A stretch of 64,000 bases of DNA from Octopus sinensis (taxonomy: Eukaryota). Positions 14,471 to 62,731 of the stretch are shown piece after piece (position 1 is the first letter of the stretch; every line of letters begins with the position of its first letter). The stretch is from contig NC_043007.1 in assembly GCF_006345805.1 (NCBI RefSeq), positions 29,884,001 through 29,948,000 on the forward strand, given 5' to 3'. The notes below the pieces were generated by a model. It had not been told where the DNA came from and ran no database searches. It saw only the letters and a program-made list of their open reading frames with translations. The position numbers and the translations under genes were made by a program.

Positions 14471-15401
14471 CTGACCCGCCTGTTCGGGACGACTTTCGGG
14501 CCAGGGCCCATGGACAACTTCCAGAGATCCCTGGCCTGGCAGTGCTACCGAGAAGCGCTACCCGTTCGGGATAAGCTCTACAGACACGGCTCGAGAAACA
14601 CAGGGCCGACCTGCCCGAGATGCGGTCAGAGCGACGAAACCGTTCTGCACGCACTCGTTCAGTGTCCACCAATTTCCGATGGGCTGTATTCGAACAACTG
14701 CTGTCACGTGTGGGACGAGTCGGTTTATCAGCTGAGTCTATCGTCAATATTGTCACGCCTCCTTCCTTCAAACGGGAAGGAAGAGCTATTTTCATCATCC
14801 TTGTGGCTATGGCGAAAGAATGTATCTGGTGGACGCGTCTGAAAGGATTGGAGACAAACACTTTTCCTCTCTGGTCAATCTCTCATCAACTTCTTCAAGT
14901 ACCACTTGAAAAGGAAAGTGAGAGTAGAGAGGCAAGTTTGTCTAGCGAATGTTTTAAAAAAAGATGGGTGAATGTAGCAAGAATGGCACGTATGAATGAC
15001 GAAGCCACCTTGAGCATAGTCCTATGAACCCAGAAATCGAAAACAAGAGTTGCTTATTTGCAAAAAAAAAAAAAAAAGAAATATAAAATGTGACTTCATT
15101 GACGAGGTTACCGTGGTCTTTTTCCGCAGGCTTTTCTTTCACGGTAAACCTCACCTGTCCTCCCCTTTACACTTCATATTGACATTTCTGTGATAACGAT
15201 CCCTATTGATCATTTTTTTTTTCCTCTCCCCCCCCTTTTTTTTTTAACCCCCCTTATTTTTGTCCTCTTTCTCTCCTTTTACGATCCCTTTTGATCGAAC
15301 CTCCCCCTTCCCTTTTTTTTTTTTTAATACCTTCAAAAGAAAAGCTCTACCTTGTAATTTGTTCTATCTGTGTGCAGCCCTGTGTGGCTAATAAAGAAAC
15401 A

Positions 15402-15402
<1 letters not shown>
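14471..15402 (+). mobile_element. 5'-truncated Tx1/L1-clade LINE 3' end, copy 1 (frameshifted)
   Basis: [38 protein letters not shown] is the L1-type C-terminal zinc-binding domain. 3' UTR ends AATAAAGAAACAT joined to (ATCT)n. Confidence 0.88.
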
Positions 15403-15464
<62 letters not shown>

Positions 15465-15508
15465 TATCTATCTATCTATCGATCTATCTATCTATCTATC
15501 TATCCTAT

Positions 15509-15541
<33 letters not shown>

Positions 15542-16473
15542 CTGACCCGCCTGTTCGGGACGACTTTCGGGCCAGGGCCCATGGACAACTTCCAGAGATC
15601 CCTGGCCTGGCAGTGCTACCGAGAAGCGCTACCCGTTCGGGATAAGCTCTACAGACACGGCTCGAGAAACACAGGGCCGACCTGCCCGAGATGCGGTCAG
15701 AGCGACGAAACCGTTCTGCACGCACTCGTTCAGTGTCCAACAATTTCCGACCTGTGGGCTTATGTCGAACAACTGCTGTCACGTGTGGGACGAGTCGGTT
15801 TATCAGCTGAGTCTATCGTCAATATTGTCACGTCCGCCTCCTTCCTTCAAACGGGAAGGAAGAGCTATTTTCATCATCCTTGTGGCTATGGCGAAAGAAT
15901 GTATCTGGTGGACGCGTCTGAAAGGATTGGAGACAAACACTTTCCTCTCTGGTCAATCTCTCATCAACTTCTTCAAGTACCACTTGAAAAGGAAAGTGAG
16001 AGTAGAGAGGCAAGTTTGTCTAGCGAATGTTTTAAAAAAAGATGGGTGAATGTAGCAAGAATGGCACGTATGAATGACGAAGCCACCTTGAGCATAGTCC
16101 TATGAACCCAGAAATCGAAAACAAGAGTTGCTTATTTGCAAAAAAAAAAAAAAAGAAATATAAAATGTGACTTCATTGACCGAGGTTACCGTGGTCTTTT
16201 TCCGCAGGCTTTTCTTTCACGGTAAACCTCACCTGTCCTCCCCTTTACACTTCATATTGACATTTCTGTGATAACGATCCCTATTGATCATTTTTTTTTC
16301 TCTCCCCCCCCTTTTTTTTTTAACCCCCCTTATTTTTGTCCTCTTTCTCTTTACTATCCCTTTTGATCGAACCTCCCCTTCCCTTTTTTTTTTTTTAATA
16401 CCTTCAAAAGAAAAGCTCTACCTTGTAATTTGTTCTATCTGTGTGCAGCCCTGTGTGGCTAATAAAGAAACAT
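15542..16473 (+). mobile_element. 5'-truncated Tx1/L1-clade LINE 3' end, copy 2 (same breakpoints, 1071-bp period)
   Basis: Same sequence as 14471-15402 apart from small indels; flanked by (TATC)n on both sides. Confidence 0.88.
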
Positions 16474-20539: not shown

Positions 20540-21530
20540 CTTGCCTTGATCAGGCATTCACATAAACCAGAGATTCTCAGACAGGCGCTGAGCATGTGGA
20601 ACGAGGCGTGAGACATTAAGGGGCGGTGAGGTAACATAATCAACATTCTGAAAGATAGAAGTCAGGCAGTAGAGGCTAATGGAGCCACCTCTATGAAAAT
20701 ACAAATAGTGAGCGGTGTTCCACAGTGATCTTAGGACCACTGCTTTTTATAGTGACCCTCTCAGATATGCCCACAAGTGCCCGGATAGCCACCCTTGCAG
20801 GCTACGCAGACGATACGAAAGTCTCGCAGAATATACAGAACCCCAGCGATGTTGCACACCTGCAGCAGGAGTTGGACTCAATCTACAGATGGGCTGAGGA
20901 TAATAATATGCAGTTTAATGCTGAAAAATTCCAAGCCCTGCGCTACCAGCATCCAAAACTGAATATGAAGCTTACAGGGTACACCGGTCCACAGGGAATT
21001 TCAATCCCAGAGCCTAAGTCTGTGAGGGACCTGGGTATCGACATGAGTGATGATACCTCTTTCCAAGTGCACGTTACCATGATGGCGACAAAGTGCAGAC
21101 GACTGGCTGGATGGATCCTAAGAACTTCATCAGAACCAGAGATAAGGAAACAGATGGGTCCTTGGCGGACATTCGTCCTCAGCCGCCTGGGATTACTGCT
21201 CACAGCTATGTCACCCACCAGTGTGAAATTAACAGCGGACCTTGAAGCAATCCAGAGAAGATTCACAAAGAATATCGTCTCTTTGCAACGCGGCTCAGCT
21301 ACTGAAAGGTTGAAACAGCTAAGACTCTACTCCCTGAGAGAAGACGGAAAGGTATGCAGTAATATATATCTGGAAGAGCCTTGAAGGAATTGTGCCAAAT
21401 TTTGGCATTGAAAGCTACACCAATGCCAGAACGGGACGACACTGCATAGTGCCAAAGATCCCAGCAATGCTGCCCATTCAGGCTACCAGGACCAGCTTCT
21501 GCAAACAGCCTGGGTTTCAAGGGCCCCCCG
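20540..21530 (+). mobile_element. CR1-like LINE reverse transcriptase fragment (decayed)
   Basis: SGVPQ..LGPLLFIVTLSDMP..YADDTKV..LQQELDSIYRWAEDNNMQFNAEKFQAL..VRDLGI..LEAIQRRFTK: RT domains 4-7 and CR1-type C-terminus with frameshifts. Confidence 0.88.
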
Positions 21531-49108: not shown

Positions 49109-49316
49109 ATGCCCACCACCATTAAAATACCTGCTGATGACGTCACAAATGCTACAACCAACACCAACACCAGTGCCACCACCCACAACAACAACAACAA
49201 CAACTCTACAGAACTGTCCCATTCTCTCAGCCAATCCGATTCTGATGCTAACAACATAGTTTCTATAAAACCAGGAGCAGGAATTGCTGAAGATTCTGTT
49301 CTTGAAACAGGAAATG
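49109..49316 (+). CDS. DNAAF1: DNAAF1 coding exon 1 (MPTTIKIP.., Thr/Asn-rich)
   Basis: Pyrimidine tract + CAG|ATG; donor G|GTAAAT; phase 1. No recognisable homology, assigned by phase and position. Confidence 0.7.
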
Positions 49317-52300
49317 GTAAATGGTTTTTTAAAATCAAAATTTACAGAGTTTGTGATATTTCTAAATTAATGACGTTTGTTCTTGATTGTTTAGTTGGCA
49401 TTCAATTCTTGTTAATGGTACCACACAGGGTCCATGTAGGAGTAAAATGTCATTGCTGCATGTGGGGACAGGTACTGGACTGTGTCTGTGGTAAATAGGT
49501 ACCACTGGACGCTACCCTTCTCTGTATTGTATTAAAGATTTAAATACTTCACTCTCAACTGATTTTGGTTTCAAATTTTGGCACAAGGCCAGTAAATTTG
49601 AGGGGAGGGTGAAGTCGATCACATCGGCCCCGGTGCTCAGTTGGTACTTATTTTACCGACCCCAAAAGGATGAAGGGCAAATCAACCTCAGCAGAGCTTG
49701 AACTCCAGGCATAAAGACCAATGGAGTGCAACAAAGCATTTTGTCAACCATTCTGCCAACTCATTCTGTCTTTTGCTCTCAGAAGATATTAAAGTTATTT
49801 GATCTCCAATTGATTCCAGTGATTTCCAGTGTTCTTTGTTTAGTGGCTCCCAGCCTAGGGTCCACGGAACCCTGGTGGTCTGCAAAGGTAGTACTGGGGG
49901 GAGGGGGTTCCGTGAACTAAATTCAAAATTTCATATATCATCATCATCATCATCATCATTTAGCGTCCGCTTTCCATGCTAGTATGGGTTGGACAGTTCA
50001 ACTAGGGTCTGGGAAGCCAGAAGGCTGCACCAGGCTCCAGTCTGATCTGGCAGTGTTTCTACAGCTGGATGCCCTTCCTAACGCCAACCACTCCGTGAAT
50101 GTAGTGGGTGCTTTTTACGTGCCACCGGCACAGGTGTCAGATGAGGCTGGCAAACGACCACGATCGGATGGTGCTTTTTATGTGCCACCGGCACAGGTGC
50201 CAGACGAGGCTGGCGAACGGCCACGATCGGATGGTGCTTTTTACGTGCCACCGGCACGGAGGCCAGGATAAGCATATTAAAAGGGGTCCATGGGAAAACA
50301 CATTTAAATATAATGGTTGGGAACCACTGTGAAAAGGTTGGAAACCACTGGTTTATGCCATTGATATGAAGTTGCTCTTTCTCTCTCTCTCCCTCTTTCT
50401 GTCCGCTTGTCTGTCTGTCTCTGCCTTTCTCTGTTTCTTTCTTTCTCTTGGTATTTATTATTCACTTACAGACACGTATGTACTTAAACATTCAAATTTA
50501 TTTCAGATGGAACCACCAATCAGAGTGAATTTGCTGGAGATTGCTCAAAGACATTGGAATCTACTGAAGATTGTCCAGAAGCAGTGGGAACCATTGGGGA
50601 TTGTCCAAAGACAGTGGAAACTGTTGGAGATATTTCAAAGACAGGAGAAGATATTGGAGATTGTCCAGAAATAGTGGAAGCTGTTGGAGATTGTTCCAAG
50701 ACAATAGAAAAGGCTAAAGATTGTTCAAACTTGGTTGCATCTGCTGGAGATTGTTCAAACACAGTGGAAACCATGGAAGATTCTCCAGACCCAGTAGAAT
50801 TTGTTGGAAATTGTTCAAAGATAATTGAACCTGTTGGGGATTGTCCAAAGACAGTGGAAACTGTTGGAGATATTTCAAAGACAGGAGAAGATATTGGAGA
50901 TTGTCCAGAAATAGTGGAAGCTGTTGGAGATTGTTCCAAGACAATAGAAAAGGCTAAAGATTGTTCAAACTTGGTTGCATCTGCTGGAGATTGTTCAAAC
51001 ACAGTGGAAACCATGGAAGATTCTCCAGACCCAGTAGAATTTGTTGGAAATTGTTCAAAGATAATTGAACCTGTTGGGGATTGTCCAAAGATATTGGAAG
51101 GTGTTGGAGATTGTCCAGAGACAATGGAATCTGTTGGGGATTGTCCAAAGATATTGGAAGATGTTGGAGATTGTCCAGAGACAATGGAATCTGTTGGAGA
51201 TTGTTCCAAGACATTGGAAGATGCTAAAGATTGTTCAAACACTGTTGTATCTGCTGAAGATGTTTCAATAACAGTGGAATCTATTGAAGAATCTCTGAAG
51301 ACAGTTGAATCTACTGGAGTTTGTTCAAAGACTGTGGAAGCTGTTGGAGATTGTACAAAAATATTGGAAGCTGTTGGAAGTTGTCCAGAGATATTGGAAT
51401 CTACTGGAGTTTGTTCAGAGACAGTGGAATCTGTTGAAGATTGTCCAAAGATATTGGAAGATGTTAAAGTTTTTTCAAATGTAGTCATATCTGCTGCAGA
51501 CAGTTCAAAGACAGAGGAATCTACTGGAGAATTTTTGAAGAAAGTGGAATCTACTGAGGATTGTTCCAAGACAGTGGAATTTGTGGATGATTGTCCAAAG
51601 TCAGTGGAATCTGTTGGTGACGGTTCAAAGACACTGGAAGTTATTGAACATATTTCAAATAAAGTGGAAGCTGTTGAAGATATTTCAAAGACAGAAGAAA
51701 ATGTTGGAGATGTTTCAAAAAGTGTGGAAGATGTTGGAGATATTTCAAAGGCAGCAGAAACTGTTGAAGATTCTTCAAAACTAGCAGAATCTGCTGAAGA
51801 TGTTCCAAAAATAGTAGAAGATGCTGCAGATAGTTCAAAGACATTGGAATCTGAGACAGTGACTACAAATGGTCTGGATGGAAAACAGAAAGACAGTGCA
51901 AAAGATAATGGTAATTATTCCATTTTTAGTTAGTTCCTCCTAGCAGATTTAACTTTGGATATTGATGTGTGTCTGGCTAAGTTCCTTAATGTTGTAATGT
52001 CATTGAATGTTGATGGTATAACTCTTATGTTGTGCTGTTGGGATAGCATGGATTTTTTGTTATTGTTGGGTTTGGAGGAAGTGGGAGCACCTGTAGCCTT
52101 GCAAGACCAATGAGATGCCATTAAGGTTTGTAAGTCAACCTCTGCAGAAGAGAGACATGAGCAAGGAGGGAATTCCAGGGGGATGACATGGTGGGAAGAA
52201 GGACTGGCATTTGTGATTAGTGCAGGGTCTGGTGGGTGGGTGGGAGGTGTGGAGATGAACACAACAAGTGAGATGGGAGGAGAAGGAGTGGCAAGTGGAA

Positions 52301-55300
52301 CAGAGATGCCTGAATGGAGAGAGTATGGGCCCAGCGTGTGTGCTGGGGAGGAGAAGTAGCCAGTGATATAATTGTGCTAGGAAAGAAAGAGAATGGGGTG
52401 GGGGTGAAAGTGGACCCTGGTGGAGACCTCAGTTGATAGAATGAGGGACAGAAAGAGTTCCACCAATACACATGGAGAGTTTTGCTATCTGACAGAATGG
52501 GAGACAGATGCAGCCCTTAAGCAGGACATTTTTAATAGACTTGCATGCTATAGCCAAAATCTTTGTTGATGTTGAGGGCAACGCGTTACTTTTACCAAAT
52601 TCCTCCAGGACAAGAGCTTACTGGTGACACAGGAGAGTTGGTCAGATCTGGCTTGTTTTGGTATAACTGTGATGTAGCAGCATGTTGTGATGTTATTGAA
52701 TATTGATGGTAGAAATACACCACCAATTTTCTGGTTTCCCTTGGTTCCATTCCCATGCTGGATCATCTAATTTGCTTCAACAAAGAGAAGCCACATGATG
52801 GAAATTCCATGGAAATTCCCCAAAAGACTGCTGTTGTCATCAATTGTCTTTTTGTTAATAAACCTTCATGACACACCTTTGTTTATTCGTTAGAAACATT
52901 TGATAAAGTTGGAAACATTTCTTCCAATTCTAATAACCGAATGGTGTCAATATTTAAAACCAAATCGATTACCAAGTGTGAACCTCCTAACTGTTAGGCG
53001 CCCCACTGTTCCCTTTTCTTGAAGCATAACTGTGAAGGGCTTATATTTAGCTTTCCCTTTTTCATACTGGGACACTGTATTCCTCACAGAAAGAGTTATT
53101 AGGGGCTTAGCATGTGGTGTTTTTATCAAATTTATATGGAAGAAGAATATTTCCTCCACCTTCGCAATGTGTTATGAGGGAATCAACAAATGTGTTTTAT
53201 GAAGCTTTTGTAACACAATATGTTATTAATAAAGGACATGGGAAATTTAAGTGTCAACACAAGATTAAAAGAGGAACCGGATCATCAGATGCTGGGGAAT
53301 CGGTAGAGTTAGAACTGTATAACTGTAGGTTGTGATGTCAATGACCATTGATGAGGATATAACTGTGATGTGGTGTTCATTGGTGTAGTTTCTGATGGAG
53401 AATGTAAGAAAGAAAAGAAAGAAGAACCACCACATGAGAAATCTGCTTTTGAAAAACTGGATGACCACTGGCCAAGGTAAGACACGTTCATAATTACAAC
53501 ACATGCACACACACACACACACTCACTCCCTCATATACATATACACACTTTTGATTGTAATGTTCTTTGCCACCCTACATCTTTCATCTTCCTCTCCCCT
53601 ACTGATAATTACCACCTCCACCCTTGTTCAGCCTCCCCTGCATTACCACCCTCCCCCACCCACCTCTCTCCTCTTTCTGCACCTATAAACTCATCCACCC
53701 GCCCTTCCACAGACTCACCTTTTTGGGTATAAGAGAATAGGCTCTGACATCCCTTTGCCACCCTTATATATAATATACTTATTTCTTTACTACCCAGAAG
53801 GGGCTAAACACAGAGGGGACAAACAAGGACAGACAAAGGGATTAAGTCGATTATATCGACCCTAGTGCGTAACTGGTACTTAATTTATTGACCCCGAAAG
53901 GATGAAAGGCAAAGTCGACCTTGGCGGAATTTGAACTCAGAACGACTGTGGTGCTGGTGGTGTAGTTGCCAGGCATCTCTTCCCTAGCAACATGCCTGTG
54001 CCTGTCCCTCTGTCATACTTTGACCTTTCAACACTCACCACAAAGCCACCTCGCTCCCTCTTTCCTTTTCAGCTTTAGGGTTTTGTCCTGCAAGTTACTG
54101 AGTGACCTCATTAATGGTGGAGTACATAGGGTGGGGGAAATCACTCAGAACTCTCTGCAAAATGGTTGGCATCTGGAAGGGAATCCATCCATAGAAACTA
54201 AGCCAAAGCAGACCCGGAAGCATGAGGGTTCTGTGTGGCTCATTATTGGATCCTGTCGAACCGTCCAACCCATGCCAACATGGAAGGCAGACTTTATGTG
54301 ATGATGATGATGATGATGGTGATGATGGAGTTGATGATAATGATGATGGTGGTAGTGTTGATGATGATGTTGATGATGGTGATGGTGGTGGCAGTGGTGG
54401 TGGTGGTGGTGGTGGTGGTGATGATGATGTTGATGATGGTGATGGTGGTGGTGGTGGTGGTGGTGGTGATGTTGATGGTGGTGGTGGTGGTGGTGGTGGT
54501 GGCAGTGGTGGTGGTGGTGAAGGTGGTGGTGGTGGTGATGGTGGTGGTGGTGGTGGTGGTGGTGGTGGTGGTGGTGGTGGTGGTGGTGGTGGTGGTGGTG
54601 GTGGTGGTGGTGGTGGTGGTGGTGATGATGATGATGGTGATATTACTGCCCACTATACCCTGTTATATTAGTTTGCACCATTCTGTTACCCCACAGACTG
54701 ACCAAGAAATTCCTCCGCCAACACTGCAAGGAGCACAAACTGTATCAAACCCCTGAGCTAAACGATGTCCTTTACCTACACTTCAAAGGTGAGTACGTTT
54801 CGGTTGATGTTGGTAGGAAAGCGAGAGGTTCCTACGTTTGAGATAAAGGTCTTCTAGTGTTGATTCTCTTTGAATACCCTGGGTGCTTTTAGCAGGATTG
54901 TAGGCCTCATAATCCACCTGGCCCTTTGGTGCTTCCCGTAGGGTGGTTGGTCCAATTTGGCTCTAACTGTTGGCCTATAGGTGTCTCTAGTGGGCAGCTG
55001 GATCCATCACACCTTAACAGGGTGGAAGATGCTGCACACTTGAGGGTCTGGCTGTGAAACTGATGTGGTGGTCACATGACGGATTGTCCAACCAGCCAGG
55101 ACAGCTTGACCTACTAGAAATAACAGCTAAACCTCCCCCATTCTGCCATCTTAAAAAGGAAGGGCATATTGGATAAGTTTCAGATCCACTGAATAAAAGA
55201 CTTGACAGTCAGGACTGAAGCATTTTTGTGTGCAAGGACTGACCCAGGGCTAAACAACAACAACAACAACAATTACATGTTGTTGAACAGAATTAATTGT

Positions 55301-56878
55301 AGAATTGTTTACATTTCTAATTGTTGTAAAGGAATTAATGATGTGAATGTTTTAATTAATTAGTAACATGGTTGCTTGGCAACTGTGAGATTTGGAGTTT
55401 AGCTGTCATTTATTTGGTTTCTTGGTGTTTTCTGTCTCAAATTGTTTTTTTGTTTTTGTTTTGTATTTCTCTCATTTCTGTGTCTGGGGTCTCTTCTTTT
55501 GTGCAGGTATTTATAAAATTGAGAATCTTGAAGAATATGTTGGCCTGAAGTGTCTTTGGTTAGAAAATAATGGACTGAATAGGATTGAGAACCTTGACCG
55601 TCAGGTCGAAATGAAGTGCCTCTATCTGCAGCAGAATCTCATCTACAAGATTGAAAACTTGGAATCGATGCATAAATTGTCCAATTTAAACCTTTGCCAC
55701 AACATGATTGAAACCATTGAGAATTTGTGTGAGTTGCAGGTTCCGTGTTTCTCTCTGGGGAAATGGTATGAAGGGCAGATTGCTTATTATGGCTTTGGGA
55801 AAATATAAAAAGTCAGCTGGTTTTATCTTGGGGGAAAGGAAACTATTTGAAACCCTGCTAACATGTTACCAATGTATCAGTAATCACACTTTGTCGGGGT
55901 CAAATTATAAGGGAGTGAAGCTGCATAGGAAATAATGAAGTAGAGACTTGAAAGGGGTCAGGTTGTGTACTGACCCCTTTGCACTGATGTTATGTACTGT
56001 ATCACCTACTCATGAATTAGGGTATGGAAATGTGGAGTGCCTGACATGAGTGGAGTTTGAGTTGAGGTTAATGGCTTTCTTTGGAAATTTGAGTGAGTTA
56101 TTTGAGTGGAGTCTGTTGTAATATGAAAATATGGAAATTGAAGAGTGTGACTTGAGTAGAGTCTTTTGAGTGTGGACTTTAGTATCTGTGGAAGCTGTTG
56201 AAGATATTCCAAGGACAGTGGAAGGTGTTGGGGATTGTTCAAAGACAGCAGAAGCTGTTGAAGATTCTTCAAAGATAATAGAATCTGCTGAAAATGTTCC
56301 AAAAATAGTGGAATTGGAGATTGGTTCTTTCTGTAAATAGCATTCAGATATAAGGTATAAAAACATTATCAAGTTATCCTTGAAAATATTCCTGTTGAAT
56401 TATCTACGAGATGTGCAGGGCCAAAAGTCACAGAGATTAAAAATGGAATTGGTGCATTTTGTATGGTTGCAACGGATGAAGCCATCAGATTCTGGCCACA
56501 GATCACAATATGCAGTCAGGCTTTGTGACTTTTGGCTCACCCTCTATATATAATTATAAACATATTCAGATCGAATCAAATATACTTTGAAATTATAATT
56601 ATAATTCTCAACTGTTTTTACATTTTTTGTCTCTCGTTGCAGCCTGCTTACCCCAGCTGAGCACCCTCCAGATAACCCACAACAAACTATCCACCCTGAA
56701 ATCTGTAATCCACCTCAAAGACTGTCCGTCCATTTCAGTGTTGGATCTTTCTCATAACAGACTTGAACAACCAGAAATTGTCGAAGAAGTCTTTGCCAAA
56801 ATGCCTGCCTTGGTTCGTAGTTCTTCTTCTTCCTATCACCATTGTTGTAGTTGATGTTTATATTTTGGATAATATATA

Positions 56879-56927
<49 letters not shown>

Positions 56928-59900
56928 AGATAGAAAGCAATATAGGTGCTACTCAGCACCCTCAATCACAGTGAGTGACAATTGAATTTTTCCTTTTTGG
57001 TTATATATATATATATATATAAACATAATCAAATAGGGTAATAAAATAAATTATTATTACCATTGGCCAAGCACAAAAAACGAATTAGTCATTAGACTAT
57101 ATATTATTCATATAGAAATACAATAAAAGGCTTCCAAATAAGGAAGCGTAGTGCTAGAAACACAAAAAGGGATAAATTCATGAAAGGAATGAAAATTAAA
57201 AACATTTACCATCTCAGCTCTATCCCAGACCGAACGGTTTCTGTGTGTTTGCTAAAAAAGAGGTAGAAACCGTTCGGTCTGGGATATAGCTGAGATGGTA
57301 AATGTTTTTAATTTTCATTCCTTTCATGAATTTATCCCTTTTTGTGTTTCTAGCACTACGCTTCCTTATTTGGAAGCCTTTTATTATATTTCTATATATA
57401 TAAATTTATAAATCAAGAAGATGGAATGAATAGGCTTTAATCACAAATCACAACAACTGTTTCCGTGCTTTTATGTTTTATTGCATAAAATATTATAGAA
57501 ATAATCACATAAATAAATATGACCCAGCTGCAGCAGCTATTTAATTGATGTGTGCTTGTGTTTCAGAGAGATGTTAGACAAGATATTCCACTCTTTCCCC
57601 CTTGTCTGTTGTATAATATGTGTAACTGTTATTTCTTGTTTTTTTTCAGGGAGTTTTATATTTGATTGGGAATCCTGTTATCAGAAACATCAAGAATTAC
57701 AGGAAACATGTTACCGTGGCAATTGTAAGCGAGATACATTAATTCTAGCTGTTTGACTTGAAAGTGTGTGTGTGTGTGTGTTTTATATGAGTGCAGATAA
57801 TATGTGCATGTTTGTGTCTGAATGTGTTTGTGTGCCTATGTGTGTGAGTATGTGTATGTGTGTATGCACAATGATTCAGCCTCTAAACCAGCCCCATCTG
57901 GACCCAGATATTCTCCTTGTTTTATGTTCAGACTGGCCCCATCCAGCCCCTCACACCTAGAACATGCCGTACCAGTAATGGCACCCAAATAGATTAAAAC
58001 AACTGATGTAAATGATCTTGTTGTTGCTGTTGTTTAGCCCTTGGTCAGTCCTGATTAAACAAACCCACGATGGAAAGCATCTCAGGATTTTTTCATTAGA
58101 ACTAATTCCATTTTCTTTTCCATGTTTTGACTCCTGCACCAGATTAGTAACGTGGCAAGTAGGAAAAGAGGTCTAATAACACTGAAACCTGTCCTCCATA
58201 CTGCCTTCTGATGAAACCAGATTTGAATTTGTATTATAGTAGAGTATGGAAGAGCTAACATTACCCTAGAGTAGGGGATTCCCATAAGAAGACATTTAAG
58301 GATTAAAATCATGGGGGTATATTACCGTATGTAGTAAAATGAAATGGTTTTAACCTTTATAATTTGTCTGCATCCTTGGTCAAGAATGAAGAATTATAGG
58401 GATGAAGATTCTAGTTTCCATTTTCATTAAAAAGGAGAGGGCCAAAACCTTTCCCTTGTATTTTGGTTTTGGTAGTAGTGGTGGTGGTGGAGGTGTTGAT
58501 GATGATGGTGGTGCTGGTGGTGGTGGTGGGGGTGGGGGTGTTGATGATGATGGTGGTGCTGGTGGTGGTGGGGATGGGGGGTTGGAGATGATGGTGGTGC
58601 TGGTGGTGGGGGTGGGGGTGGGGGTGTTGATGATGATGGTGGTGCTGGTGGTGTGGTGGGGTGGGGGTGTTGATGATGATGGTGGTGCTGGTGGTGGTGG
58701 TGGGGATGGGGGTGTTGATGATGATGGTGGTGCTGGTGGTGGGGGGGGGGTGGGGGTGTTGATGGGTGGGGGGTGGGGGTGGGGGGTGTTGATGATGATG
58801 GTGGTGCTGTTGTGGTGTGGGGGTGTTGGTGATGATGGTGGTTGGGGTGGGGGTGTTGATGATGATGGTGGTGCTGGTGGTGGTGGTGGGGGTGGGGGTG
58901 TTGATGATGATGTTGGTGCTGGTGGTGGTGGTGGGGGTTTTGATGATGATGGTGGTGGGGGTGGGGTTTGATGATGATGGTGGTGCTGGTGGTGTGTGGG
59001 GGTGGGGGTTTTGATGATGATGGTGGTGGTGGTGGTGGGGGTGGGGGTGTTGATGATGATGGTGGTGGTGGGGGTGGGGGGTGGGGGTGTTGATGATGAT
59101 GGTGGTGCTGGTGGTGGTGGTGGGGGTGGGGGTGTTGATGATGATGGTGGTGCTGGTGGTGGTGGTGGGGGGTTGGGGTGTTGATGATGATGGTGGTGCT
59201 GGTGTGGTGGTGGGGGTGGGGGTTTGTTGATGATGATGGTGGTGGTGGTGGTGGTGGTGGGGTGGGGGTGTTGATGATGATGGTGGTGCTGGTGGTGTGG
59301 TGGTGGGTGGGGGTGTTGATGATGATGGTTGTGGTGGGGGTGGGGGTGGGGGTGGGGGTGTGATGATGATGGATGTGGTGCTGGTGGTGGTGGTGGGGGT
59401 GGGGGTGTTGATGATGATGGTGGTGGTGTGGTGTGGTGGGGGTGGGGGTGTTGTGTGATGATGGTGGTGGTGGTGGTGGTGTGTGGTGCAATCTTTCTGT
59501 CACTCACTTTTTTCTCGTTATTGTCATACTCTGATTAATTCCCCACTTGATGACATAAATACTTAATTATTTTGCTTCATGCCAGTAATTGCATTCGTAA
59601 ATTGATTTTTAATTAATAGTCAATAGTTCTTGATTAGATATCCAAAGTAACGTTTATAAACTGAATTTTGGCAGAAAAGCCTGAAGTATTTGGATGATCG
59701 ACCGGTTTTCCCTCGAGACCGTGCCTGCTCTGAAGCATGGTAGGTATTTCAGACATCAGCACAACTTTTTATACACACTCGAAGATATAATATGTGTGTG
59801 TGTGTGTGTGTATATATATATGTATATAATACAAATAAGAAAAAGTTGATTAACCAACTAAATTGTTTCTGCATTTCCTTATTTGTATTATAAATTAATG

Positions 59901-60910
59901 GTAAAATATTTCTTTACCTTCACCCGTTTAATACAATAAATAAGTTAATTGCATTGCAATTAAAAACACTTGTGTATTAATAATTTGGGTATTATACCAA
60001 CAGTATATTGGATAGATATTATCCCTTAGTGGGTTGCACCCATAACCCCTATCTTACTTGGTGTTATATATGTATATATACGTGTGTGTGTGTGTGTGTA
60101 TGTTTATTCACTATAAAGACACAACTGTATATACATCCATATGTCCATCTATACACAGCATATATAGCATTATAAATAGTATTCCTTCTTGTTTGGACAA
60201 GAGTCTAAGATGACCTGAAAAGGTCAACAAATTAATGTCCTTTTACTCTTGACTGTGTTATGAACGATATATCTGACCAGTTAACGCTCACTGACCAGGT
60301 CCAGTGGCAGATTTGCTGTGGTAGTTGTGTCAGTGTATCTCGGCATCAGAGGCTGTCAGAATAAATAAGAGAACAATTACCAAGGAATTCACTGACACAG
60401 CGAGACCCATCGATGGATTCTTTTCCTATCACTGCACTGATACTTAATTCTCAATGGCTCAATTCAGCTAGCTGTAAATAGGTACCATGAGGTTGTACAG
60501 CTCGTTGAGTATTATAGATGGTGCCACCCTCATCAGACTGATGAATGCAATGCTGTGTTCAAAGCATTTCTGTGGCACTGTGCCATGACTGAAAATAGAG
60601 AATCTCTCAACAATTGTATTACGGTTGGCACTACATTAACACTTATTCAACACTGCCCTAACACTGCAAAGTTTACTGATGCCACAAGAAACCTACACAC
60701 ACAATCAGAATGTATTTGTGATGGTGGTACAGCTGTTGTAGCATGGCCTGTACCATGACGAAGTAAATGTGAAGAATGTTGTTGTTATTGCTGTTGTTTC
60801 TATGACAGGGCCAGAGGTGGAATAGAAGCAGAGAAGATAGAACGACAGATTTGGATTGATAAAGAAAACAAACGAATTCAAGACAGTGTGGATGGTTGGT
60901 TGAGTATTGC

Positions 60911-60953
<43 letters not shown>

Positions 60954-62731
60954 GAGTGAGAGAGCTGTGCATGCCATCAAAGTGACACTGGGGTAAAATA
61001 TATGAAGCCCAGTATACCCATCATGACTACCCATCTGATAAGGGTACGCTAGGCACATGCATCACAACCATGGTGATCTCATATCAAGATAAACAGCACA
61101 TGACCTTGCAGGTGGGGCCCAGTTAGAATTTTCTTCTGGTCTAGTGACCCATCTCGCTCAAAAGGTCCCTGAATAAGGGTTGTTTAAGGATGTTGAATGA
61201 AACACCCATGTTTCCAGAGGTGAATTATTCAAACCCCAAACAATCCCTCTCAACACACGGCTATGATGCTCCCCCACTACTTCTGCTCGTGATCAGAGAT
61301 GCATATATCGTCAGCCACTAAGGGACATTCTCAACTGGTTATGGTCAAACAGCTGACAAGCAAATCTGGGGTATTGAGCAGAATATTTGCTGTAGCCCAT
61401 TATTATTATTATTATATTATTATTATTATTATTATTATTATTATCCTTATTATTATTATTTGGTAGTCTTATTTTTATCATGTGCTTTCACTGCACTATT
61501 GAGCACATTTGTGTGTGCCTTGGGTATGTTCTGTGGTTTGTTGTGGTGCTCTTATTTTCAATGTAGTGAAAGTGTTTTATGTGGGATGTGTGCAGTGCCT
61601 AGTTGTGCTATTTTCTGCATGTTATTATTATTATTATTATCATTATTGTGCTTTTTTTACCCAACATTTGCTGTAAACTATTTTGTTTTTATATTGTTCT
61701 CCTCGTGTGTTGCCCTGGTGGCAAATAAAAGAAATTGTTACTTTTATTTTTTAATCCTCAAAATCGTTATCGCATCAGACAAAGTGCTCAGCAGCATTTC
61801 TTTTGGTTCCTTTCATTCTTAGTTCAAATCTTGCCGAGATCGGGATAGATGAATGTGTGTGTGTGTATGTATGTATATACGTATATATGTATGTATCTGT
61901 GTGTGAATGTGTGTGTGTGTATCTGTGTGTGTGTGTGTTTGTGCGTGTATGTGAATTAAACAATTCTGTACATAGAAATCAGTGGTGGCCTTTGTTGTAG
62001 AGAGCTGTTAATGTGGCTAAAATGAGATGAAGGGTGAGAGACCCAAGGAATCCAATTTCTCTCCTCGGCATACGATCTTCTTTAGAAACTCCTAAAATTT
62101 TATATAACCATATTTTTCTACTCTTGAATACTTTGAGCATTATTTGTAGTGAGTGTGTGAGTGTGTGTGTAGTGTGTGTGTAGCACAGGTGTCACCGTGT
62201 GTTGCTGTAACGAGTAATAAACTGTGTTGTGTTTCCGCTGTCTGTTTGTAGCTCTGTTGAAGATTCGGCAAAAAAGTGAGGCAAAGAAGATTCAGAAGAA
62301 ACTGGACGAGAAATTGTTGGAACGGGGAGATGCGGAGAGTAAGCAAAGAGAAGTTGTTATCGAGGAGAGCATTGACTGGTTGTATGGGACGTACAAGACA
62401 AAATGGGTTGATGCGGAGAAGGGAGGGGACGGAGACGAAGCGAAAACAGGGGGGGAAGAAGGACTGGGAGGAAATGCAACGAAGCCAAAGGAAGAAGAGG
62501 GAAAATGTGTGGAAGAGAAAAGAGAAGAGCAGACGGATGAAACTGTTAAGGAGGAGGAGGAGGAGGAGAAAAGTTTGGAAGAACAACAACAAGAGGAAAA
62601 TGTGGAAAAGAAGACTGCAGAGGTAATATAAAGGAATTGTTAAGTTTTGGTTTTTATCATTTGTAGGAAGAGTCAACAGGAATGGTTGTCTGTCTGTGAG
62701 TCTTTCTCTCTCTCTTGCTCTCTCACTCACA

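What the first reader, a model, noticed from the sequence alone, without database searches (positions are those of the whole stretch)
50507..51910. DNAAF1 carries a 468-codon symmetric exon of Cys/acidic decapeptide repeats upstream of the LRR domain
Seen: a 30-bp unit (consensus about T-V-E-x-V-G-D-C-[SP]-K) repeated about 44 times, with a perfect higher-order 240-bp duplication (50594/50834) and a near-perfect 60-bp duplication (51091/51151). Splice sites are good and the phase is 1-1 with length divisible by 3, so the exon can be skipped cleanly. Established: DNAAF1/ODA7 is a cytoplasmic dynein-arm assembly factor. I do not recall such an N-terminal array in vertebrate or algal orthologs. 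Inference: a lineage-specific, still-expanding repeat domain with regularly spaced Cys/Asp/Glu (metal binding, spacer or condensate role), possibly restricted to a sperm isoform.
Basis: partly seen in the sequence, partly recalled or inferred. Interest (0 to 1): 0.7.

Follow-up and report, generated by a model that had tools for sequence, protein, structure and literature searches.

The report
Octopus DNAAF1 repeat-array coding exon
An octopus version of the cilia-motor assembly gene DNAAF1 really does carry a 1.4-kb exon made of 44 copies of a 30-base unit that is kept readable as protein and is still changing in copy number, but it looks like an ordinary fast-evolving, probably floppy acidic spacer, and a sister species' public gene model already contains it.

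Summary
Window 50507-51910 is a 1404-nt open, phase 1-1 exon. It contains 44 in-register 30-bp units (D-C-[S/P]-K-T-V-E-x-V-G) and a perfect 258-nt internal duplication.

It belongs to the DNAAF1 orthologue. The phases fit exon A (ATG at 49109) and exon C, and exon C leads into the conserved RLTKK...LRR core.

The O. bimaculoides orthologue (XP_014788744.1 / A0A0L8FLP4, 1298 aa, "uncharacterized") includes the same exon with the same junctions and conserved splice sites. Its array is 279 nt shorter.

Evidence that the exon is translated:
- It has no stops, where about 10 are expected (P<=0.0002).
- The only between-species indels are 210, 9 and 60 nt; about 9 frameshifting indels are expected at intron rates.
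- Its divergence is 0.72x the intron rate.
- A 4-unit relic of the same repeat in a downstream intron did acquire frameshifts.

The peptide itself is weakly constrained (dN/dS 0.88, against 0.09 in the LRR exons). It is strongly acidic (net charge -73), has no Pfam family and no confident fold.

Among 1.84 billion representative proteins, only the O. bimaculoides protein shares it. Other animal DNAAF1 N-termini are short.

I found no support for metal binding or a sperm-specific isoform, and no transcript reads were available. Verdict: a real lineage-specific coding minisatellite of modest interest.

The parts
49109..49316 (+). Exon A of the DNAAF1 orthologue. The ATG is at 49109 and the exon encodes 69 codons plus 1 nt (ends in phase 1). 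Donor AATG|gtaaat.
   Evidence: tblastn of P0121 residues 1-93; junction search; sequence; splice-site table.
50507..51910 (+). Repeat exon B: 1404 nt, phase 1-1, 467 full codons, 0 stops. Acceptor tttatttcag|AT, donor AATG|gtaatt.
   Evidence: The O. bimaculoides counterpart is L004:11113-12237 (1125 nt), with identical splice-site contexts.
50539..51858 (+). Array of 44 in-register 30-bp units (36 of them distinct), consensus GATTGTTCAAAGACAGTGGAATCTGTTGGA = DCSKTVESVG.
50594..51091 (+). Perfect higher-order duplication: 50594-50851 is identical to 50834-51091 (258 nt, offset 240 nt = 8 units). O. bimaculoides has a single copy.
51079..51198 (+). Two-unit (60-bp) duplication with 2 mismatches in unit register. 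O. bimaculoides has a single copy.
53389..53476 (+). Exon C, 88 nt, enters in phase 1 and leaves in phase 2. It encodes (V)[28 protein letters not shown](R).
54697..54788 (+). Exon D, the conserved pre-LRR motif (R)[30 protein letters not shown](G).
55507..55728 (+). Exon E, leucine-rich repeats.
56185..56323 (+). Relic of about 4 units of the same 30-bp repeat inside intron E-F. It is not part of the annotated protein. It carries frameshifting indels relative to the other two octopods.
56643..56812 (+). Exon F, leucine-rich repeats.
57650..57724 (+). Exon G ([23 protein letters not shown]).
59675..59739 (+). Exon H ([22 protein letters not shown]).
60809..60894 (+). Exon I ([28 protein letters not shown]).
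62252..62622 (+). Exon J, the acidic C-terminal half (3' end approximate). The gene runs on past the end of the window.

Best explanation
The array is a genuine, translated internal exon of the octopus DNAAF1 (ODA7/LRRC50) orthologue. A 30-bp segment was amplified head to tail, by unequal crossing-over or replication slippage, into a coding minisatellite. It inserts about 470 residues of an acidic decapeptide repeat carrying one Cys per unit, between a short N-terminal exon and the conserved RLTKK...LRR core.

The unit length is a multiple of three and the exon lies upstream of the essential LRR domain in the same reading frame. Whole-unit gains and losses are therefore tolerated, while stops and frameshifts are removed by selection. 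This keeps the exon open even though the peptide sequence itself drifts almost neutrally.

The product is most likely an intrinsically disordered, highly negatively charged spacer or tail on a cytoplasmic dynein-arm assembly factor, not a folded or metal-binding domain.

Shown here: the anatomy, the phases, conservation of frame and splice sites in two species, the copy-number change, and the weak peptide constraint. Inferred: inclusion in the main mRNA, disorder, and the lack of a specific function.
For: - Gene identity and phases.
- Annotated orthologue: the O. bimaculoides protein XP_014788744.1 / A0A0L8FLP4 contains exons A+B+C+LRR with the same junction residues.
- Splice sites: the contexts are the same in both species.
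- Stops: none in the 36 distinct units, where scattering the observed differences at random gives 9.6-11.7 (P<=0.0002). The sense frame is open in both species.
- Indels: between species only three occur, of 210, 9 and 60 nt. At intron rates about 15 indels are expected, about 9 of them not a multiple of 3 (P about 2e-4).
- Substitutions: the rate is 0.72x the composition-matched intron rate (P about 0.01; Fisher P=0.007).
- Internal control: the intronic relic of the same repeat has an 8-nt deletion in O. bimaculoides and a 2-nt insertion in a more distant octopod.
- Weak peptide constraint: dN/dS is 0.88 in exon B and 0.09 in exons C-I.
- Recent growth: the extra units in the window coincide with a perfect 258-nt repeat and a near-perfect 60-nt repeat.
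- Composition: 111 D+E, 38 K, 0 R/Y/W, net charge -73, pI 4.05.
- No domain or fold: no credible Pfam family and AlphaFold2 mean pLDDT 45, pTM 0.24.
- Context: a review describes the LRRs of DNAAF1 as set among disordered regions (PMC12633730).
Against: - No RNA or peptide evidence could be consulted. The O. bimaculoides model may be partly ab initio.
- There is no wobble signature. Third codon positions are the least variable, both within the array and between species. This is not what ordinary purifying selection on a protein gives.
- One antisense frame is also nearly open, with 1 stop in both species. Openness alone is therefore weak evidence.
- A single-sequence AlphaFold2 run cannot prove disorder.
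- The perfect 258-nt duplication could be an assembly error.
Confidence: 0.7

Rival explanations
1. The exon is real but is a cassette used only in some tissues or isoforms (for example testis). Other cells would join exon A directly to exon C and make a DNAAF1 without the array.
For: The exon is phase 1-1 and its length is divisible by 3, so skipping keeps the frame. It is an unusually long internal exon. The conserved Met of the PRMTKK motif is Leu in both octopuses, so every isoform must start upstream in exon A.
Against: The exact A-C skipped version of the O. bimaculoides protein is not in the 15-billion-protein collection; this is weak evidence. The splice sites of exon B are at least as good as those of its neighbours. 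No expression data of any kind were available.
Confidence: 0.2
2. The array is a non-coding intronic minisatellite that happens to be open, and gene predictors wrongly took it up as an exon.
For: dN/dS is about 0.9 and third positions show no excess variation. An antisense frame is also almost open. No transcript evidence was seen here. A fragment of the same repeat does sit in an intron.
Against: There are zero stops against about 10 expected (P<=0.0002). No frameshifting indel occurs between species, against about 9 expected. A 9-nt indel is not a unit multiple yet is in frame. Splice sites and phases are conserved. Divergence is below the intron rate. The true intronic copy did acquire frameshifts.
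Confidence: 0.05
3. The regularly spaced Cys, Asp and Glu form a functional metal-binding or redox-sensing module, or a selected condensate scaffold that tunes DNAAF1 behaviour in dynein assembly particles.
For: There is one Cys every 10 residues in 27 of 44 units, and Asp1 and Glu7 are nearly invariant. All 20 O. bimaculoides Cys align with Cys in the window. DNAAFs concentrate in liquid-like DynAPs (PMC7785291, listed).
Against: Cys conservation is not significant (about 2 changes expected, P about 0.12, from the counts). Cys is replaced by I/V/S/G/F in 17 of the 44 units, 9 of them among the last 10. There are no C-x-C or C-C clusters and Cys is 5.8% of residues. Amino-acid-changing positions evolve at 0.73-0.88x the intron rate. 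There is no Pfam family and no confident fold.
Confidence: 0.07
4. The extra 8-unit block (the perfect 258-nt identity) is an assembly artefact, so the true exon in this species is 240 nt shorter.
For: The identity is perfect over 258 nt, and O. bimaculoides has only one copy.
Against: An independent assembly of O. bimaculoides shows a 37.5-unit array at the same place, so the array as such is real. A second, older duplication (60 nt, 2 mismatches) shows that such events do occur here.
Confidence: 0.1

Closest known systems
DNAAF1 / LRRC50 / ODA7 (cytoplasmic axonemal dynein assembly factor)
   Same: The pre-LRR motif (M/L)[21 protein letters not shown], the LRR_4/LRR_8/LRR_9 repeats and the post-LRR segment are conserved. 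The window is 58-62% identical to named vertebrate DNAAF1 over the LRR exons. As elsewhere, the LRR core is flanked by low-complexity sequence (PMC12633730).
   Different: The human protein is 725 aa. The O. bimaculoides protein is 1298 aa, and the window's would be longer by 93 codons in this exon. Other animals have about 30-130 unrelated residues before the PRMTK motif. The octopuses have exon A plus a 375-468-codon decapeptide array there. RefSeq labels the O. bimaculoides protein 'uncharacterized'.
Coding minisatellites / VNTR exons (for example the MUC1 60-bp repeat, the DRD4 48-bp repeat, involucrin; recalled from general knowledge, not tested here)
   Same: Head-to-tail units whose length is a multiple of three, an open frame kept while unit number changes, higher-order duplications, and weak constraint on the individual residues.
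   Different: It sits in a cytoplasmic chaperone-like assembly factor and not in a secreted or structural protein. The unit is D-C-[S/P]-K-T-V-E-x-V-G. Within-species length polymorphism was not examined.
Acidic repeat proteins hit by composition (Ciona LOC100183481, Ptychodera 'OMM-64-like', and others)
   Same: Long runs of E/D/S/V/K-rich short repeats give HMMER E-values of 1e-23 to 1e-15.
   Different: They are 20-35% identical and come from unrelated taxa and gene families. None has the DNAAF1 LRR region, and none has the DC[SP][KEN] motif in an array of this kind. This is compositional resemblance, not homology.
Metallothionein-like Cys-rich repeats
   Same: Repeated Cys in a short periodic unit.
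   Different: There is one isolated Cys per 10 residues (5.8%), no C-x-C or C-C motifs, and Cys is missing from 17 of 44 units. The defining features are not met.

Membership tests
DNAAF1 / LRRC50 / ODA7 | SDS22-like leucine-rich repeat domain (Pfam LRR_4 / LRR_8 / LRR_9) | tested here: met
   Pfam on the O. bimaculoides orthologue: LRR_4 39.8 bits, LRR_8 36.2 bits and LRR_9 36.0 bits, all above their cut-offs. Window exons D-I are 91-100% identical to it.
DNAAF1 / LRRC50 / ODA7 | Conserved pre-LRR motif (M)TKK..L...[18 protein letters not shown] | tested here: met
   Window 54695-54790 aligns at 62-77% identity to the start of DNAAF1 fragments from vertebrates, a termite and others. Met is replaced by Leu in both octopuses.
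DNAAF1 / LRRC50 / ODA7 | Closest relatives are proteins named DNAAF1 (orthology) | tested here: met
   The top named hits of two searches are 'dynein axonemal assembly factor 1' from reptiles, birds, insects, corals and gastropods. No tree or reciprocal search was made.
DNAAF1 / LRRC50 / ODA7 | Required for cytoplasmic pre-assembly of axonemal dynein arms | not testable with these tools
   Needs genetics or biochemistry.
Coding minisatellite (VNTR) exon | Head-to-tail units whose length is a multiple of 3, in one register | tested here: met
   44 units of 30 nt with no indel.
Coding minisatellite (VNTR) exon | Reading frame kept open beyond chance, and across species | tested here: met
   0 stops against 9.6-11.7 expected, P<=0.0002. 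The frame is open in both species. Indels are only 210, 9 and 60 nt.
Coding minisatellite (VNTR) exon | Unit number differs between lineages | tested here: met
   1404 nt against 1125 nt. The difference maps to recent internal duplications.
Coding minisatellite (VNTR) exon | Present in mature mRNA and in the protein | not testable with these tools
   Only annotated models (XP_014788744.1 / A0A0L8FLP4) include it. No reads or peptides were accessible.
Metallothionein-like / Cys-cluster metal-binding repeat | High Cys content with C-x-C, C-C or C-x-x-C clusters | tested here: not met
   27 Cys in 467 residues (5.8%), one per unit, never clustered, and absent from 17 of 44 units.
Metallothionein-like / Cys-cluster metal-binding repeat | Cys preferentially conserved | tested here: inconclusive
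   20 of 20 aligned Cys are conserved between species, but only about 2 changes are expected by chance (P about 0.12, from the counts).
Intrinsically disordered acidic region | Biased composition, no aromatic core, no confident predicted fold | tested here: met
   Net charge -73, 0 Arg/Tyr/Trp. AlphaFold2 mean pLDDT 45, pTM 0.24, 337 of 467 residues below 50. This was a single-sequence prediction, so the evidence is weak.

The most novel reading that the evidence does not exclude
The array is not a passenger but a selected module: a strongly anionic, Cys-studded disordered scaffold that changes how octopus DNAAF1 partitions into dynein-assembly condensates or senses redox or metal state in sperm or ciliated epithelia. 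The unexpected conservation of its third codon positions would then reflect RNA-level control of this giant exon (splicing enhancers or editing-related structure).
Probability: 0.1. Interest if true: 0.55.

Novelty: new member of a known kind. Interest (0 to 1): 0.3.

Why it matters
It is a clean example of an essential, deeply conserved cilia gene absorbing a growing 1.1-1.4-kb coding minisatellite. Selection acts on the reading frame and hardly at all on the peptide, and an intronic copy of the same repeat serves as a built-in neutral control. For cilia biology, it offers a natural length series of a disordered N-terminal tail on DNAAF1, which could be used to ask whether such tails matter for dynein assembly particles. 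For genome annotation, it shows that the RefSeq entry 'uncharacterized LOC106882542' is the octopus DNAAF1. It opens no long-standing question, and a public gene model already contains the exon.

Tried and rejected
- The word-indexed protein search with the whole exon gave no hit, although the O. bimaculoides protein is in that collection. In all three searches the hits had lengths close to the query's, so I treat this as a limit of the tool and not as absence.
- A query spanning the exon B / C / D / E junctions, meant to catch spliced transcript contigs, returned only DNAAF1 from other phyla and no cephalopod transcript.
- An exact look-up of a hypothetical exon-B-skipped O. bimaculoides isoform found nothing.
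- The Pfam hit of the repeat to COG2p_C (32.7 bits, with no single stretch passing) is a low-complexity artefact.
- The other 132 HMMER hits are compositional. None has the DNAAF1 LRR region or an array of the DC[SP][KEN] motif.
- AlphaFold2 gave low-confidence helices only, so I ran no fold search.
- The idea that the intronic 4-unit patch is a second cassette exon was rejected. In the window it has an AG acceptor, a GTAAAT donor and phase 1-1. However, O. bimaculoides has an 8-nt deletion there, and the distant octopod has a 2-nt insertion and lacks the donor.
- The antisense 464-codon ORF was rejected as a gene. It has a stop in both species, has no splice or gene context, and shares its third codon position with the sense frame.
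- The lack of CpG in the repeat does not explain its low divergence. The deficit remains at non-CpG sites and after correcting for A/T against G/C content.
- Literature searches for the accession numbers, for DNAAF1 plus octopus, and for the SRA run found nothing.
- The bacterial promoter scan is irrelevant to a eukaryotic gene.
Full report
**What is in the sequence**

The window is eukaryotic, about 40% G+C, and full of microsatellites and SINE/LINE debris.

Tandem Repeats Finder reports a 30-bp period, 44.2 copies and 68% matches at 50527-51853, with a 240-bp higher-order period. Cutting from 50539 in 30-nt rows gives 44 units that stay in register to 51858 without a single indel.

The interval 50507-51910 is 1404 nt. 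Its offset-2 frame has no stop; the other sense frames have 16 and 23.

The stretch 50594-50851 is identical to 50834-51091 (258 nt).

The consensus unit GATTGTTCAAAGACAGTGGAATCTGTTGGA encodes DCSKTVESVG.

**Which gene, and does the exon fit it**

ORF fragments at 54.7, 55.5 and 56.6 kb match proteins named dynein axonemal assembly factor 1 at 58-62% identity.

A junction search guided by the orthologue gives GT-AG exons:
- A 49109-49316 (ATG at 49109)
- B 50507-51910
- C 53389-53476
- D 54697-54788
- E 55507-55728
- F 56643-56812
- G 57650-57724
- H 59675-59739
- I 60809-60894
- J from 62252

These concatenate into one open frame. Exon A ends in phase 1, exon B is phase 1-1 and exon C starts in phase 1, so both inclusion and skipping of exon B keep the frame. 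Exon C ends in phase 2 and rebuilds the Arg of the conserved P-R-(M/L)-T-K-K motif with exon D.

**Independent support from a sister species**

An exhaustive HMMER search of 1.84 billion representative proteins with the exon's translation found one true relative, P0121 (E=1.9e-183, 91% identity). This is XP_014788744.1 / UniProt A0A0L8FLP4, 'uncharacterized protein LOC106882542' of Octopus bimaculoides, 1298 aa.

Its sequence reads exon A, Asp, the repeat, Val, exon C, then RLTKK and the LRR region. These are the junctions predicted in the window.

Its genomic locus (L004, CM046611.1:969264-1004343) has the repeat exon at L004:11113-12237. That exon is 1125 nt, also divisible by 3, and has the same acceptor and donor contexts.

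The window therefore comes from an octopus close to, but distinct from, O. bimaculoides. Introns differ at 6-8% of aligned sites.

**Is the exon coding, or only an open minisatellite?**

Several tests bear on this.

- *Stops.* I scattered the observed 223 differences from the consensus at random over the 36 distinct units. This gives 9.6-11.7 in-frame stops; 0 are observed (P<=0.0002).
- *Indels.* Between the two species the exon aligns with three gaps only, of 210, 9 and 60 nt, all in frame. The 9-nt gap is not a unit multiple. The flanking introns carry 23 gaps in 1683 aligned nt, 13 of them not multiples of three. At that rate the exon should have about 15 gaps, about 9 of them frameshifting (P about 2e-4 for each comparison).
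- *Substitutions.* There are 53 mismatches in 1125 nt, against 122 in 1683 nt in the introns (odds ratio 0.63, P=0.007). After removing CpG sites and matching A/T against G/C content, the exon evolves at 0.72x the intron rate (P about 0.01).
- *A built-in control.* About four units of the same repeat lie in intron E-F (56185-56323). They occupy the same position in O. bimaculoides and in a more distant octopod known only from Logan contigs of SRR11869390/91/84. That copy has an 8-nt deletion in O. bimaculoides. In the distant species it has a 2-nt insertion plus a 30-nt deletion. This is the decay expected without a reading-frame constraint.

Together these results say that the exon is read as protein in transcripts that matter to fitness.

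**How constrained is the peptide?**

Constraint is weak.

- Between species, dN/dS is 0.88 in exon B (dN 0.048, dS 0.054). It is 0.09 in exons C-I (dN 0.019, dS 0.22).
- The repeat regions are 90% identical in protein.
- All 20 Cys of O. bimaculoides align with Cys in the window, but only about 2 changes would be expected by chance, so this is not significant.
- Within the array, Asp1 (35/44) and Glu7 (39/44) are the best-kept residues.
- Cys2 is present in 27/44 units. It is replaced by I/V/S/G/F in the other 17, 9 of which are among the last 10 units.
- The 467 residues hold 111 D+E, 38 K and no R, Y or W. The net charge is -73 and the pI is 4.05.
- Pfam gives only a spurious hit.
- AlphaFold2 without an alignment gives mean pLDDT 45 and pTM 0.24.

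The simplest reading is a disordered polyanionic tail. A recent review notes that the LRRs of DNAAF1, DNAAF11 and DNAAF12 sit among regions of varying disorder and that no experimental structure exists (PMC12633730).

**An unexplained detail**

Third codon positions are the least variable. Within the array, the fraction differing from the consensus is 0.244, 0.233 and 0.142 for positions 1, 2 and 3. Between species the rates are 0.73x, 0.88x and 0.55x the intron rate (P=0.016 for position 3).

The LRR exons show the usual opposite pattern: 1.71x at position 3 and 0.29x at positions 1+2.

The antisense frame that is almost open (1 stop in both species) shares the same third position, so it does not explain this. 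Neither does the absence of CpG.

Splicing-enhancer or other RNA-level constraint on a 1.4-kb exon is a possibility, and so is chance. The repeat units share ancestry, so the within-array counts are not independent.

**Turnover and age**

The window's exon is 279 nt longer than that of O. bimaculoides. The extra sequence coincides with the perfect 8-unit duplication and the 2-unit duplication with two mismatches. The array therefore grew recently in the window's lineage, unless the 8-unit block is an assembly error; that needs long reads to settle.

The intronic relic shared with a distant octopod shows that the repeat family predates that split.

**Distribution**

Apart from O. bimaculoides, no protein among the 133 HMMER hits has DNAAF1's LRR region or the DC[SP][KEN] motif in an array of this kind. 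The better-scoring hits are acidic repeat proteins of Ciona, a stick insect, Ptychodera, a frog and others.

DNAAF1 fragments from gastropods, arthropods, a coral and vertebrates have about 30-130 unrelated residues before the PRMTK motif. Squid, cuttlefish and nautilus loci could not be examined.

**Verdict**

Its functional ideas (metal binding, a condensate role, a sperm isoform) remain untested guesses and gain nothing from the data here.

The feature is a new, undescribed example of a familiar kind: a coding minisatellite expanding a disordered region of a conserved protein. It is already present in a public, though unnamed, gene model. No paper in the searchable library mentions it.

Noticed in passing
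window 56185-56323 (also L004:15494-15622 and L001:~820-925): About four units of the same 30-bp repeat lie inside the intron between LRR exons E and F. They are at the same place in O. bimaculoides and in a more distant octopod. In the window the patch has an AG acceptor, a GTAAAT donor and phase 1-1, but the other species carry frameshifting indels and one lacks the donor. It is a decaying relic and not a cassette exon.
   Followed up: yes
window 50507-51910 compared with L004:11113-12237: Third codon positions of the repeat exon are more conserved than first and second positions. This holds among the units and between species (0.55x the intron rate). The LRR exons show the normal excess at third positions. 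I have no explanation for this.
   Followed up: partly
window 50523-51914, minus strand: A 464-codon antisense ORF runs across the array. The same antisense frame has just one stop in both species and is depleted of stops relative to simulation (P about 0.001-0.003). It is probably a by-product of the lack of Tyr/His/Gln codons in the sense frame.
   Followed up: partly
window 58470-59488 (intron G-H): A 1-kb G-rich minisatellite built on (TGG)n, with a 45-bp period and 22 copies. Window 57962-59442 has no counterpart in the O. bimaculoides locus.
   Followed up: no
window 54299-54641: A (TGA)n/(TGG)n microsatellite of about 340 nt that ends only 55 nt upstream of the acceptor of exon D.
   Followed up: no
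window 49939-50265 (intron A-B), including the 63-bp tandem repeat at 50107-50257: A SINE-like dispersed element with other copies in the window and in L004. It has an internal 63-bp unit repeated 2.4 times. It accounts for part of the extra length of this intron relative to O. bimaculoides.
   Followed up: no
window 54697-54702 and P0121 residue 476: The Met that begins the conserved MTKK motif in many animal DNAAF1 proteins is Leu in both octopuses. In some annotated fragments that Met is the first residue. The octopus protein therefore cannot start at the LRR core and must use the upstream exon A.
   Followed up: partly
window 14510-16105 and 20725-21384: Fragments of retroelement ORFs lie far upstream of the gene: duplicated zinc-finger-like ORFs and a reverse-transcriptase-like ORF. 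I identified them only by reading the ORF translations; no family search was run.
   Followed up: no
L004:29926-35080: In O. bimaculoides the next gene downstream of DNAAF1 encodes a RhoGEF/PH-domain protein. The window ends before that point.
   Followed up: no
exons C-I, window against L004: Synonymous divergence of the LRR exons (dS 0.22; third positions 1.7x the intron rate) is clearly higher than intron divergence (6-8%). This is unusual, and I did not pursue it.
   Followed up: no
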